64,000 bases of DNA from Lama guanicoe. Lineage: Eukaryota. The notes under the pieces are model-generated. The model ran no database searches. It saw only the letters and a list, made by a program, of their open reading frames with translations, and was not told the DNA's origin. Below, piece by piece: positions 26,771 to 40,768 of the stretch (position 1 is its first letter; the number at the start of each line of letters is the position of its first letter). The translations under genes were made by a program, and so were the position numbers. The stretch spans positions 1,886,485-1,950,484 of the forward strand of contig MU053431.1 of the NCBI GenBank assembly GCA_013239625.1. The letters run 5' to 3'.

Positions 26771-27248
26771 CTTTTCCACAAAATCTCCTTCAAGGAGCGT
26801 CGTATGTTTTGCCGAATCTGTGAATTTGGCTGTGATGGGGCGGCGCTTGAGGTGCCTAGACGTCCAGGGGCCGGGGAGGCCAGGGGGACAGCAGCAGCCC
26901 CAGGCTTCCTGGCTGCCCCCACTGAAGCAGCAGAGCCGGGGAACTGTCTGGGGGCAGATGTGGCGGTGCTGGGCGCCAGCCCTGCAGGCTTGGTGGCAGG
27001 AGCACTGCCTGCAGGGGCGGCTGAGAGCCACCGCCTCTTGGGGCTGGCGCCCTTGAGGCCCAAGGGAAGCTTTCTGATGGCTGCTTTGCCCGCTGCTGTG
27101 CCAGCAAAAGGAGGGGACTTCTTTGGGACGAGATTTCTGGGCGAGGGCTGTTTGCCGCCCCCCAAGGAGCCCAGAGGACCCGTTCTCTTCGGCACTGCAG
27201 CCGCCGCCACCACCGTCTTCTCCTCCGTGCGCCTGTCCTCCTTCCCTG
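26771..27248 (-). CDS. DIDO1: DIDO1 exon 7
   Basis: GKEDRRTEEK...SQPNSQIRQNIRRSLKEILWKR; acceptor tttgcag|cag, donor AG|gtgggc; 478 nt. Confidence 0.93.
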
Positions 27249-33200: not shown

Positions 33201-34287
33201 CCCTCTTTATGCCTTGACAGTAATGAGAAAGAAACAGTGAAATGAAGAATAAGGAGTAAGACTGTAAAAACACAAACATACTGTGAAGAGAAATAAATAA
33301 AACAATTACAGGTTAAAGAAACTATACAGAAATTGTCAAAAACAATTTTTAAAAACTCACCAGAGAACAAGTGTAAGTTAACCCCTCACCCCGGGAACAC
33401 AAAGGAGTTACCGACACTTTCATGGGAAAAGCAGGGAAGAGCTTCCATGCATAGCAAGGTCTTGCCTGCCATGGTCACTGAAAAGCAGCCCCTCCCCTTC
33501 CTGCAACCCAAGGCCAGTGCCAGGCCTGGGAGGAGCAAGGTCCAGAGCACCTCCTGGAGCAGGGAGCTGGCTGCCCAAGGATCCAACGCCTGACTGGACC
33601 CAGGTCAATGCAGAGAGCGTCTCCTCCTGAGAACCGTCCCCAGCATGACCTACACCCCAGATCTCATCCCTGCCCCCCCACGTTATGCTCCGCAGCCAGG
33701 GGTCCTGGTGGGGATGCAGGGCTCTGCCGAGTGTGCGCAGAGTGCCCCCTCCCACTGGCCTGTCGGGAGGGGCCCCTGCACCTGCGAGGTGACGGCTTGG
33801 GGCAGAGAGAGAGGCACTGCTACTCACCAAGGCTGCAGTCGGCGCTTTACCAGTGACCTTTACTCTCCTCCCAATCATCTTTTGGGAAGATGACATTTCT
33901 GGGATAACAAAAAATGATCAGAAGCAACTAGCTCAAAAATATGTTCCTGACGTACACTATGAATTGTGGCTATCCACTCATTTACTTCTGAGCGGTGACC
34001 GTGCTGGGAAGGGCAGTCATTAATTTGTCCCAACTTCCCATCAACAGATCCATCCCCAGCTTCAGTGAGGAGCTGACTGCAGAGAAGAGGGGCAGGGGAG
34101 AGGAGGGAAAGCCAGCCTGTGAGCACAGCCCCAACCTTCCCCCTGTATCACGCGCCAGCCCAGTGCACCTAGACTAACCCCACCCTGGGGCTCTCTGGGC
34201 AGGTTCCCAGGTCCGGTCGACAGGGATGGAGGATAACTGAGCTGAGATCAGTTGCTCAGGGCGCTGTGGCTATACCCCAGTTGTCCT

Positions 34288-34293
34288 TTTATT
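34288..34293 (-). terminator. DIDO1: Candidate poly(A) signal for the short DIDO1 isoform
   Basis: First minus-strand AATAAA I found past the DIDO1 stop, after an AT-rich UTR-like block (34400-35000); the downstream element is weak. Confidence 0.3.
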
Positions 34294-34566
34294 CTGACAC
34301 GTGCCTATCACCAATTTAGAGCACTTCTGCACAATCTTCCAAAGTGACTGCTCCCCACCTGCGCACAGCTGGGTGATGCCCATTTTCAGGCCTGTTCATA
34401 GCCCCCGTTAGCTAAAATGGAGAGGTGCTGCAATTCGATGGAAATTTGAGACATGTCGTTAGCACGCAGTTCTTAGCTCAAACCTAAGTGTATCAAGACT
34501 CATTCTAACACAGCAATTGCTTAATTCTGTACTTAGAGTTCACTCCTAAAATCCAAAATTAAAAAC

Positions 34567-34588
34567 ATATATATATATATATATATAT
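34567..34588. repeat. (AT)11 microsatellite
   Basis: Direct reading. Confidence 0.95.
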
Positions 34589-35419
34589 GCAGTAATGCTT
34601 TGCAAATTATTTGCAACTCCTTTTCTTGGGTCTTGGGCCACTACATTCTTAGAATGAGTATTTAGTTACGCATTTTTCTAACCACTCTGGATTTACCATT
34701 ACCCATGAGGCCTTCCCTCAGGCGACTGCTTAAAAAGCTGGCTGAAAGAAGGCAGCCCACCTCTGTAATTTTGAGATTTAGGGCTACTTTGTGGTGCTTT
34801 TTAAAAAGTCACAAGAGTATAAAACGTAGCACAAAAAAAACTGAATAAAAATAATAAGATGTGGGTTATGGATCAATTTAAATTCCCAAAATTCAATTTT
34901 GGCAAATGAAGCTGAGAAACAAGAACAAAGAGGAAAAATTCAAGTTGCATAACCTCATCTAGGCTCTCAAAGTTCTCTCTGAATTATCTGGATCCTGCTC
35001 ACCTGCAATCTGGAGTGAGGGGACCCAACAGGGCCACACTCCAGTGTGGAGCCGGGACACGGGGTCCCCCGTCTGGGTGCTGCAGAGTGGAGAGACACCG
35101 TGCTCACTTACCTTCGTGCTTATGAAGCGGCGGTCAACGGCCGTTCAAACTGGCTTGTGTGTCTATGTGGTGTGTGGTGTGTGAATTGGACATGAAAAGA
35201 AAATCCCTGTCTGGCCAAAAGCAGCTTAACTCCTGAGAATCATACTTCAGTGGAACATGAGACACAGCACTACTGTGTGAGAGCCCCCACGACAGAGAAG
35301 CGAGGCTCGCAGGCACTCGTGTGGCTCCAAGGCTGGGCCCACAGCGCGTGTCTGGACGACGGGCGCTCGTGCTGGGCAGTGCGCCTGCTCAACCAGGCAC
35401 TGTGAGGTCACGCGAATAC

Positions 35420-35700
35420 TTACCAGAGCCTAAGAATAAAAAAGAGATTAAAGACAGCAACTTTCAGAGGTGAAACATTCAGCAATGAGGCTGGTACAGC
35501 TGTTTGGAAAACAGACAGAAGTCCCGACAGACTAAGGGCGGGCACACGGGGCTCTGAGGTGGCTTGGGTCAGGCGTGCGCGTCCATCTTTGGAAGGGCAG
35601 CACAAAACACAGCTACAACTCCCAGCTCTGGACAGGCCTGAGCGGATGGCTGTCCAGAGAGCCCGGGAAGGGTCCAGAGCTCCCCCTGGGTGATACATAC
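35420..35700 (-). CDS. DIDO1: DIDO1-isoform-specific C-terminal tail (exon 6 read-through; ~620-aa protein in total)
   Basis: The frame stays open past the exon 6 donor: CMYHPGGALDPSRALW...VAVFNLFFILRLW*. The CMYH..LDPSR..W start matches the short DIDO1 isoform as recalled. Confidence 0.75.
35424..35429 (-). other. DIDO1: Putative 6-nt microexon / alternative 3' splice site
   Basis: tttaatctcttttttattcttag|GCTCTG|gtaagt: branch-like motif, polypyrimidine tract, AG, 6 nt, consensus donor. Confidence 0.6.
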
Positions 35701-35917
35701 ATTTACACAACAGAGGCGGCCAGGGGGCAGCAGTCCTTTCTGGCTTTACTGCATTGTAATTGTGGTCACTCGCCCAGGACGGTGTGCCGCTGCTCTCGCA
35801 AGTGGCCTCCTGGGTAAGGCCCTCACTCCTGGGAGGGGCGGCCACCGCCTTCTTCAACGTGTCTTCCTTCTTGTCTGCGGCTGGCCTCTTGTGCACAGAA
35901 GAGATTTTAATGCCTGC
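35701..35917 (-). CDS. DIDO1: DIDO1 exon 6
   Basis: AGIKISSVHKRPA...TPSWASDHNYNAVKPERTAAP...LLCK; cag| acceptor, T|gtatgt donor; 217 nt. Confidence 0.94.
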
Positions 35918-36204
35918 CTGGATAATCAGTAAAACCCCAATCATTAATGAGGTCAGAATTACCTTCCTACATTTCACTTTCCAATCACAGTCGGGCCATG
36001 CCCTATTCCCGGTGTCCAGTCAAGCCCCACAGCGCCCTGAGCTTGTGCGTGCACGGCATCCGCTCAGCGCGAGGGCCTGGCCCACCTCCCACATCATGCC
36101 CAGGACTTCAGCGTCGGAGAGACGTGACAGCACAGCACACGATCCTGCGGTACAGGCAGGCCTCCACGCGAGAAGACGACAACGAACGCAAGGGCCAGTG
36201 GAGA

Positions 36205-36210
36205 CAGGCA

Positions 36211-36250
<40 letters not shown>
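36205..36250. repeat. (CAGG)n tetranucleotide microsatellite
   Basis: About 11 CAGG units with one CAGA interruption. Confidence 0.95.
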
Positions 36251-36251
<1 letters not shown>

Positions 36252-39938: not shown

Positions 39939-40768
39939 CTGTTGTTGTGGGGCTGCCGGCAGATGCAGTACAGGGCACTGGGGTCGTAGCCCTCACACTC
40001 GGGCTTGGGTCTGACCACGTCCCCAGCCTCTTCGTCCTTAAGCCCCGGGGCCGCCCTCCCCTCTGGCCGGCTCTCCCTGGCCTCTCTTGCCACCTGGGGC
40101 GTGGCCCCCTGCTCAGCCTCGGGCTCCTGCTGGCCAGGCAGTGAGCCCTCCACGGGGCCGCCCGCCTGGCCGTCCACAGACTCAGGAGGCTCGTCGCCCC
40201 GGCGCTTCTTCCTCAGCCTGCTCTGCGGGCCCTTGGCGGGCCCGTCGGCTGGCTCCTGCGCTCGCTTCCTCCGCAGCCGGTTCTGAAGCTCCTTCAAGGT
40301 CAAGCCGTCGCTGTCGCTGTCAGAGGTGTCGTCCTCACCGCCGCCCCCTCTGGCCTTTGCAGGGGCCGGGCGGCCCCTGGCGCCCGCAGAGCTGGCCTTG
40401 GGCCCGCTCTTCACATCGGAGGCGCTCTCCACGCTCCCTTCAGAGGCGGTTTCGGCGTCTGTGACGGGGCACGAAGTGGGCTCGCCGGGGTCCTCCAGGG
40501 AGACAGGGGCGCTCCTCCTGCCTCTGCGGCGGACAGTGGTGAGGAACTCCTCCACCCGCTCCGTCCGCTTTGGCTGCCGCCCGCTGCGCCGCAGGGAGAG
40601 GCTCTGCTGCTGCGGCTGCGGCTCCAGGGAGTCCAACTCCACCTCCCCCACGCCCTCGCGCTTGGCGATGGTGGTTCTCCGGAACCCCCACGTCTTCCTG
40701 AACTCTTTGCTGGTGGGCTTGACGGCCCTGGGCGCATCCTCCCCGCTCGGATCGCCCTTCTCGTCCAT
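39939..40768 (-). CDS. DIDO1: DIDO1 exon 3, first coding exon (exon starts at 40770; ATG at 40768-40766)
   Basis: MDEKGDPSGEDAPRAVKPTSKEFRKTWGFRRTTIAKRE...YDPSALYCICRQPHNNR; cag|GT ATG acceptor, AG|gtgggt donor. Confidence 0.96.

What the first reader, a model, noticed from the sequence alone, without database searches (positions are those of the whole stretch)
35389..35460. Triple-use switch in DIDO1 intron 6: stop codon, terminal-exon acceptor and 6-nt microexon in the same 15 nt
Seen: the minus strand reads ttgctgtctttaatctcttttttattcttag|GCTCTG|gtaagt. (1) In the exon 6 read-through frame this is ...FFILRLW*, with the TAA stop inside the GTAAGT donor. (2) Splicing exon 6 (phase 1) to the AG and reading through gives CSGKYSRDLTVPG* (TGA at 35389-35391); I recall a human DIDO1 isoform ending CSGKY..., which would make the acceptor real and conserved. 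(3) Using both sites inserts a frame-preserving 6-nt exon into DIDO2/3 (K-S-G-K becomes K-C-S-A-G-K). Established: 3-27-nt microexons with an upstream UGC are the typical SRRM3/SRRM4 neural class; a UGC lies ~28 nt upstream here. Inference: this element may arbitrate between short and long DIDO isoforms, for example U1 binding at the donor suppressing intronic polyadenylation.
Basis: partly seen in the sequence, partly recalled or inferred. Interest (0 to 1): 0.8.

Follow-up and report, generated by a model that had tools for sequence, protein, structure and literature searches.

The report
DIDO1 short-isoform terminal exon signals
The described sequence is real, but it is the already known end of the short DIDO1 isoform (a read-through stop plus a minor alternative splice acceptor), and nothing found here supports the proposed 6-base microexon.

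Summary
Observation confirmed. The minus strand reads PPT-AG(35431-30)|GCTCTG(35429-24)|GTAAGT(35423-18). The exon-6 read-through frame stops at the TAA inside GTAAGT. The frame spliced from exon 6 (phase 1) gives CSGKYSRDLTVPG*.

- **Reading 1, read-through stop:** this is the known DIDO1 short isoform. Mouse Dido1 (614 aa) ends FSFRPW* at the same place. 141 of 157 fetched proteins that reach the exon-6 end read through it (K|CMY...), from fish to mammals.
- **Reading 2, terminal-exon acceptor:** one sheep UniProt isoform (543 aa) ends KCSGKYVCLQQNLMVG*. That supports the acceptor by annotation only.
- **Reading 3, 6-nt microexon:** unsupported.
  - All ten proteins that join exon 6 to exon 7 join directly.
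  - The AG-GT spacing is 5 nt in pigs and warthog and in one rodent cluster. One rodent contig lacks the AG.
  - DIDO1 is absent from SRRM4 and neural exon tables that list the 6-nt TAF1 exon.
  - The upstream UGC is at chance level (51% of 40-mers).

Published work already treats DIDO1 as a composite intronic-polyadenylation gene.

The GTRAGT motif is kept across lineages, so a U1-related role remains an untested inference. Low interest.

The parts
35701..35917 (-). DIDO1 exon 6 (217 nt, ends in phase 1 with TGTAAAT).
   Evidence: flanking exons mapped by local tblastn with P0181
35695..35700 (-). Exon-6 donor AAT|GTATGT. It is weak (mismatches at -1 and +4). Its read-through translation K|C-M-Y (C-T-Y in pig and rodents) is kept from fish to mammals.
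35430..35700 (-). 271-nt facultative intron inside the composite terminal exon. Retained, it codes the 93-aa read-through tail. Removed, it gives the 13-aa CSGKY tail.
35432..35460 (-). Polypyrimidine tract with a branch-point-like cuuuaau and a UGC at -30..-28
35430..35431 (-). AG acceptor of the alternative tail
   Evidence: sheep isoform P0130 ...KCSGKY
35424..35429 (-). GCTCTG, the proposed 6-nt microexon. No evidence that it is spliced on both sides.
35418..35423 (-). GTAAGT, a consensus 5' splice-site-like motif (CTG|GTAAGT, 8 of 9 matches to the U1-complementary consensus). Kept as GTRAGT-compatible sequence in sheep, suids and muroid rodents.
   Evidence: protein-frame inference
35420..35422 (-). 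TAA stop of the read-through short isoform (predicted 527+93 = 620 aa)
35389..35391 (-). TGA stop of the spliced tail CSGKYSRDLTVPG* (predicted 527+13 = 540 aa)
34288..34293 (-). The only AATAAA on this strand between 35700 and 32000, about 1.13 kb downstream of the stop. Putative intronic poly(A) signal of the short isoform; its use was not shown.
   Evidence: Logan transcript contigs of 3.1-3.5 kb for 607-614-aa forms fit a 3' UTR of about 1 kb
26771..27248 (-). Exon 7 (starts CAGGGAAG; 3' end inferred from homology), the first exon specific to DIDO2/3

Best explanation
The 15 nt lie inside the composite terminal exon of the short DIDO1 isoform.

The main event (shown by homology and literature): transcripts that fail to use the weak, deeply conserved exon-6 donor (AAT|GTATGT) run on into intron 6. 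They are presumably cleaved after the single AATAAA about 1.1 kb further on. They are translated through 93 extra codons to the TAA that is part of GTAAGT.

The minor event (supported by annotation in sheep only): the AG at 35431-30 is an alternative acceptor. It removes a 271-nt facultative intron from that terminal exon and swaps the tail for CSGKYSRDLTVPG*.

The inferred part: GTAAGT is a conserved 5' splice-site-like motif. It is not the donor of a conserved coding microexon, because the AG-to-GT spacing drifts between 5 and 6 nt among mammals. Its most likely role is U1 snRNP docking. That could dampen use of the downstream poly(A) site, crowd the adjacent acceptor, or both.
For: - Sequence and frames.
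- 141 of 157 fetched proteins that reach the exon-6 end read through it, from fish to mammals. They include RefSeq mouse Dido1 (614 aa), a Bos taurus protein record (AAI14686.1, 607 aa), a Xenopus record (MGC68807 protein) and spliced Logan transcripts longer than 500 aa.
- Mouse, hamster and mole-rat proteins end R-x-W-* like camel L-R-L-W-*.
- Sheep isoform with the KCSGKY tail.
- Published work: DIDO1 'composite IpA' falls on CPSF knockout (PMC10664987). DIDO1 intronic polyadenylation and splicing of the same intron trade off (PMC13322065, Fig. 6E). DIDO1's unique C terminus carries a nuclear export signal (PMC10111866).
- Five runs on record as RNA, and others guessed to be RNA, hold 46% of the sampled words of 34250-35950. 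Exon 6 is only 13% of that stretch.
- GTRAGT is kept in several frames: sheep G-K-Y, pig G-E-Y, warthog G-*(TGA), rodents W-* or G-K-Y, and an unnamed mammal L-V-S-I.
- There is a single AATAAA.
Against: - No reads could be laid, so neither read-through, the acceptor, the donor nor the poly(A) site is shown for this animal.
- No camelid short isoform is in the protein collection.
- The acceptor rests on one automatic sheep model. The pig models (KCGEYPGL) do not fit a simple splice at the inferred pig sequence.
- Many of the 141 read-through proteins are ORFs from genomic contigs, not transcripts.
- Conservation of GTRAGT was inferred from protein frames, not DNA. The whole stretch is alignable between camel and mouse, so the motif may be no better kept than its surroundings.
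- The U1 role is pure inference.
Confidence: 0.62

Rival explanations
1. A real 6-nt, frame-preserving, SRRM3/4-type neural microexon (GCTCTG) is spliced between exons 6 and 7 of DIDO2/3, at least in lineages with 6-nt spacing.
For: - Strong acceptor and donor 6 nt apart; 6 nt keeps the frame.
- The spacing is 6 nt in camel, and by inference in sheep, mouse, hamster, mole-rat and an unnamed mammal, P0256.
- A UGC lies 28-30 nt upstream.
Against: - All 10 proteins spanning the exon 6-7 junction join directly.
- The spacing is 5 nt in pig and warthog and in the 12-member rodent cluster of P0110. The AG is lost in P0108.
- The encoded residues differ: C-S-A in camel, C-P-A in mouse.
- DIDO1 is absent from the SRRM4 and neural exon tables of PMC7935315, which list the 6-nt TAF1 exon.
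- No paper mentions a DIDO1 microexon; the only paper holding both terms is a circular-RNA review.
- TGC is found in 51% of 40-mers.
Confidence: 0.06
2. GTAAGT is an alternative donor of a long form of exon 6 (35917-35424). Alternatively, together with the second GTAAGT at 35111, it belongs to a stop-containing cassette. Splicing from it to exon 7 shifts the frame (277 nt added), giving an unproductive, decay-prone transcript that tunes DIDO output.
For: - A consensus donor lies 277 nt past the weak exon-6 donor.
- A second perfect donor AAG|GTAAGT sits at 35111, and 35429-35112 is 318 nt.
- The Moschus model P0135 shows a splice from within the read-through part.
Against: No transcript or protein with such a junction was seen. 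Decay-prone products are rarely assembled, so this absence is weak evidence.
Confidence: 0.1
3. The arrangement has no function of its own. GTAAGT is kept by descent in a slowly evolving stretch, the stop inside it is the usual by-product of the donor consensus, and the AG is used only as splicing noise that annotation pipelines picked up in sheep.
For: - Similar arrangements arise about once per 30 kb under loose criteria.
- Tail lengths and frames differ widely between mammals, from 20 to about 110 aa.
- The spacing and the AG are not fixed.
- There is no RNA structure (z = +0.73) and no Rfam family.
Against: - GTRAGT-compatible sequence is kept in artiodactyls, muroid rodents and another mammal despite frame changes.
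- This is the best tract and donor of its kind in 128 kb.
Confidence: 0.22

Closest known systems
Mouse Dido1 / human DIDO1 short isoform made by composite intronic polyadenylation
   Same: - Read-through of the exon-6 donor.
- A unique C-terminal tail ending, in mouse, at the homologous W-stop (P0159, 614 aa).
- DIDO1 is called a composite IpA gene (PMC10664987), and its polyadenylation competes with splicing (PMC13322065).
   Different: The camel tail (93 aa) differs in sequence from the mouse tail. No transcript of this animal was seen.
Sheep DIDO1 isoform A0AC11DTS2 (543 aa)
   Same: Exon 6 joined to a tail that starts CSGKY, the same first five residues as the camel frame-B tail, which implies the same AG acceptor.
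   Different: The tail continues VCLQQNLMVG* rather than SRDLTVPG*. It is an automatic model without a cited experiment.
SRRM3/4-dependent neural microexons (for example the 6-nt TAF1 exon 34')
   Same: Length of 6 nt, in frame, strong donor, a UGC upstream.
   Different: Length is not conserved (5 nt in two lineages). No inclusion was seen in any isoform. It is not listed among SRRM4-responsive exons. The UGC is not above chance.
U1 snRNP telescripting, and 5' splice-site-like motifs that inhibit nearby poly(A) sites
   Same: A consensus U1 site about 1.1 kb upstream of the only AATAAA, in a gene where polyadenylation and splicing are known to compete.
   Different: Nothing here shows U1 binding or any effect on cleavage. 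This is an analogy only.
Recursive splice sites (AG|GTAAGT ratchet points and RS exons)
   Same: A strong acceptor is followed almost at once by a strong donor inside a long (8.45 kb) intron.
   Different: The sites are 5-6 nt apart rather than juxtaposed, so a two-step removal would leave extra bases in the mRNA. A truly juxtaposed CAG|GTGAGC lies further on, at 35003|35002.

Membership tests
Composite terminal exon (intronic polyadenylation isoform) of DIDO1 | An open frame continues from the exon through its own donor into the intron | tested here: met
   ORF 35420..35977. The same K|CMY read-through occurs in 141 fetched proteins.
Composite terminal exon (intronic polyadenylation isoform) of DIDO1 | A poly(A) signal in the intron downstream of the stop | tested here: met
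   Single AATAAA at 34293-34288. Only its presence was tested, not its use.
Composite terminal exon (intronic polyadenylation isoform) of DIDO1 | Transcripts of this organism cover the extension and end at the poly(A) site | tested here: inconclusive
Alternative terminal-exon acceptor (spliced CSGKY tail) | Polypyrimidine tract, branch-point-like site and YAG | tested here: met
   14 of 16 pyrimidines, uuag|G
Alternative terminal-exon acceptor (spliced CSGKY tail) | Isoforms that join exon 6 to this acceptor | tested here: met
Sheep P0130 ...KCSGKYVCLQQNLMVG*. None was found for camelids.
SRRM3/4-type neural microexon | Length 3-27 nt, in frame | tested here: met
   6 nt in this genome
SRRM3/4-type neural microexon | Length and frame conserved among mammals | tested here: not met
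   5 nt is inferred in pig and warthog (LRLGEYP, LYPQAG*) and in the rodent cluster of P0110 (FRFGKY, 12 sequences). The AG is lost in P0108 (FSFMFW)..
SRRM3/4-type neural microexon | Inclusion seen in transcripts or isoforms | tested here: not met
   0 of 10 proteins spanning the junction carry an insert. DIDO1 is absent from the exon tables of PMC7935315.
SRRM3/4-type neural microexon | UGC enhancer upstream of the acceptor, above chance | tested here: inconclusive
   A UGC is present at -30..-28, but TGC occurs in 51% of 40-nt segments of this strand.
Recursive splice site | Acceptor AG directly abutting GTRAGT, with no bases between | tested here: not met
   6 nt lie between them.
U1 telescripting site | U1 binding that suppresses a downstream poly(A) site | not testable with these tools
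   Only the consensus match (8 of 9) and the distance of about 1.13 kb to AATAAA are known.

The most novel reading that the evidence does not exclude
The abutting AG and GTRAGT, kept in artiodactyls, rodents and at least one other mammal while their spacing is free to be 5 or 6 nt, form a small platform where U1 and the 3' splice-site factors exclude each other. Its occupancy would help set the ratio of short DIDO1 to long DIDO2/3, the isoform switch tied to stem-cell differentiation. In lineages with 6-nt spacing it might also yield a rare 2-residue insert.
Probability: 0.15. Interest if true: 0.55.

Novelty: already known. Interest (0 to 1): 0.2.

Why it matters
DIDO1 versus DIDO3 expression is reported to govern the exit of embryonic stem cells from self-renewal (PMC5390109). 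The choice between them is a contest between splicing of intron 6 and intronic polyadenylation (PMC13322065). Knowing which cis elements decide that contest would be useful.

What remains of possible value is modest:
- a deeply conserved weak exon-6 donor;
- a conserved U1-type motif 277 nt further on, which could be tested in a minigene.

Tried and rejected
The local tblastn left the whole of exon 6 out.
3. **Two metagenome scans** found nothing. The patterns were back-translated from the mouse tail (MLEAISYFSFRPW*) and the ruminant tail (DFLSVFPKSCTSSWLNVHL*). All conservation statements are therefore inferred from protein reading frames.
4. **Word search with exon 7** returned only ORFs that start in the intron or inside exon 7. 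None of the 33 hits crossed the exon 6-7 junction.
5. **MicroExonator supplements** hold no gene names, so the blank for Dido1 means nothing. Two other papers have no supplements held.
6. **RNA fold and Rfam** gave nothing (z = +0.73).
7. **The pig Ensembl tail KCGEYPGL** could not be reconciled with a simple splice at the pig sequence inferred from other frames. It would need a 2-nt difference. This is left unexplained.
Exons were searched singly by reference.
No contig taken for human was handled. N runs were left alone.
10. **The large HMMER search** was not used. At 50% clustering it could not resolve tails or a 2-residue insert.

Full report
**What is in the sequence.** The gene on the minus strand is DIDO1.
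- The first coding exon (ATG at 40768), the PHD exon (39316-38995), a third coding exon (37146-36934) and exon 6 (35917-35701) were placed from ORFs, from the text and from a local tblastn with a bat DIDO1 protein. Exon 6 was left out of that tblastn.
- Proteins found with the first coding exon are named death-inducer obliterator 1 by their sources.
- The exon lengths add to 1582 nt, so exon 6 ends in phase 1 after 527 codons.
- Its donor is AAT|GTATGT (35700-35695).
- The read-through frame runs 93 codons to the TAA at 35422-35420.
- The frame entered by splicing exon 6 to the AG gives CSGKYSRDLTVPG, then TGA at 35391-35389.
- Exon 7 begins CAGGGAAG at 27248, so intron 6 is about 8.45 kb, and a 6-nt insert would keep the frame.

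**Is it more than chance?** Partly.
- A pyrimidine-rich YAG followed within 3-27 nt by GTRAGT turns up four times on the two strands of this window under loose criteria. This one is the best of them.
- A stop inside the donor is also less remarkable than it sounds. GTAAGT and GTGAGT carry TAA or TGA in one frame out of three.

**Reading 1, the read-through stop, is the known DIDO1 protein end.**
Three cluster look-ups followed. Together they gave 157 proteins that reach the end of exon 6, and 141 of them continue K|C-M-Y, or C-T-Y. That is the translation of the unspliced donor T|GTATGTA.
- They range from teleosts, Xenopus (source name MGC68807 protein), birds, reptiles, echidna and wombat to placental mammals.
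- They include RefSeq mouse Dido1 (NP_035935.2 and NP_001278361.1, 614 aa), a Bos taurus protein record (AAI14686.1, 607 aa) and Logan transcript ORFs longer than 500 aa that are spliced upstream. Many of the shorter ones are only ORFs from genomic contigs and say nothing about RNA.
- Mouse, Mus spicilegus, Chinese hamster and blind mole-rat proteins end FSFR(P/L)W*. This matches camel FILRLW* and puts their stop at the homologous TGG-TAA.
- The literature agrees. DIDO1 is given as an example of composite intronic polyadenylation that drops when CPSF subunits are knocked out (PMC10664987). DIDO1 is also shown as a gene in which blocking 3' processing lowers the intronic poly(A) transcript and raises splicing of that intron (PMC13322065). 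A review states that the shortest isoform has a nuclear export signal in its unique C terminus (PMC10111866).
- In the window the only AATAAA on this strand between 35700 and 32000 is at 34293-34288, about 1.13 kb below the stop. That distance fits the 3.1-3.5 kb Logan contigs that carry 607-614-aa forms.
- Five runs on record as RNA, and others guessed to be RNA, hold 46% of the sampled words of 34250-35950, although exon 6 is only 13% of that stretch. This is weak support for transcription of the extension.

**Reading 2, the acceptor, has annotation support from one species.**
- Inside the ruminant cluster, the sheep entry A0AC11DTS2 (543 aa) ends ...PLLYK-CSGKYVCLQQNLMVG.
- The first five residues equal the camel frame-B tail. 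That is what one expects if the same AG is used and the next bases are GCTCNGGNAARTAY.
- Three pig entries of 533 aa end K-CGEYPGL. This lies in the same region, but it does not fit a plain splice at the pig sequence inferred from other frames. I leave that open.
- A Chinese hamster model (isoform X4, 556 aa) has yet another spliced tail.
- The short isoform therefore comes in a main read-through form and in minor forms that remove a small facultative intron from the terminal exon, and the details differ between lineages.
No camelid short isoform is in the collection.

**Reading 3, the microexon, is not supported.**
- All ten fetched proteins that cross from exon 6 to exon 7 join K directly to S-x-K, with no extra residues. 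They are mouse Dido2 (two records), two mouse-like Logan transcripts, a bat, naked mole-rat, golden hamster, blind mole-rat, yak and a snake.
- The spacing is not fixed.
  - In suids three reading frames agree on AG-GCTGG-GTGAGT, which is 5 nt: warthog ...LYPQAG*, pig ...LRLGEYP and the pig models.
  - In a rodent cluster of 12 sequences the tail reads FRFGKY instead of FRFW*. That needs one base fewer between AGG and GGT.
  - One rodent contig reads FSFMFW, that is AGG changed to ATG, which removes the AG.
  - Six-nt spacing is inferred for camel, sheep, mouse, hamster, mole-rat and one unnamed mammal whose ORF reads Q-T-L-V-S-I.
- A coding microexon of the neural class is normally fixed in length. 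Here a 5-nt version would shift the frame.
- In the supplementary tables of a study of SRRM4-dependent and neural exons, the 6-nt TAF1 exon is listed but DIDO1 is not (PMC7935315).
- The only held paper with both 'DIDO1' and 'microexon' is a review of circular RNAs.

**What the GTAAGT may be doing.**
- GTRAGT-compatible sequence is kept in every lineage whose ORFs reach it, whatever the frame: G-K-Y, G-E-Y, W-stop, G-stop, V-S-I.
- Because the spacing to the AG varies, the two signals look independent rather than parts of one exon.
- The exon-6 donor is weak (mismatches at -1 and +4) and conserved as such from fish to mammals, which is typical of a regulated site.
- A consensus U1 site 277 nt past it and 1.1 kb ahead of the poly(A) signal could restrain cleavage, as in telescripting. 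It could also crowd the acceptor 6 nt away, or serve as a frame-shifting alternative donor.
- A second perfect donor lies at 35111.
- None of this was tested. The region as a whole is alignable between camel and mouse tails, so the motif may be no better conserved than its neighbours.
- There is no stable RNA fold (z = +0.73) and no Rfam match.

Cross-species statements therefore rest on protein frames, not DNA.
- The joined spliced models were neither built nor searched.
- No human contig was handled and no N run was filled.

**Verdict.** The sequence is as described. Two of the three proposed uses are the known end of the short DIDO1 isoform and a minor annotated variant of it. The microexon is unlikely. 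A regulatory role of the conserved donor-like motif in the contest between intronic polyadenylation and splicing is a reasonable but untested idea.

Noticed in passing
window 35695-35701 (minus strand): The weak exon-6 donor AAT|GTATGT is conserved as such. Its read-through translation K|CMY (CTY in pig and rodents) appears in short DIDO1 proteins from teleosts to mammals, which suggests that the weakness itself is under selection.
   Followed up: partly
window 35106-35114 (minus strand): A second perfect donor, AAG|GTAAGTGAG, has its GT at 35111-35110. The stretch 35429-35112 is 318 nt and would form a stop-containing cassette if both sites were used.
   Followed up: no
window 34997-35005 (minus strand): A juxtaposed CAG|GTGAGC (AG at 35004-35003, GT at 35002-35001) looks like a recursive-splice-site arrangement inside the putative 3' UTR of the short isoform.
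   Followed up: no
window 36205-36251 and 34567-34588: A (CAGG)n array of about 12 copies lies in intron 5, and an (AT)11 run lies in the putative short-isoform 3' UTR.
   Followed up: no
proteins P0141, P0142, P0155 (pig, 533 aa): The tail K-CGEYPGL* shares G-E-Y-P with the pig read-through frame, but it cannot be produced by a plain splice at the inferred AG-GCTGG-GTGAGT. It would need a 2-nt difference or a model artefact.
   Followed up: partly
protein P0192 (Chinese hamster isoform X4, 556 aa): A third kind of spliced tail, K-FCPCVSFTSLKYLPVNLRSCGSKGY*. Its end looks homologous to the camel frame-B tail. The acceptor would lie about 30 nt upstream of the camel AG, near camel aaag|TTGCTG at 35462-35461.
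   Followed up: no
   Followed up: partly
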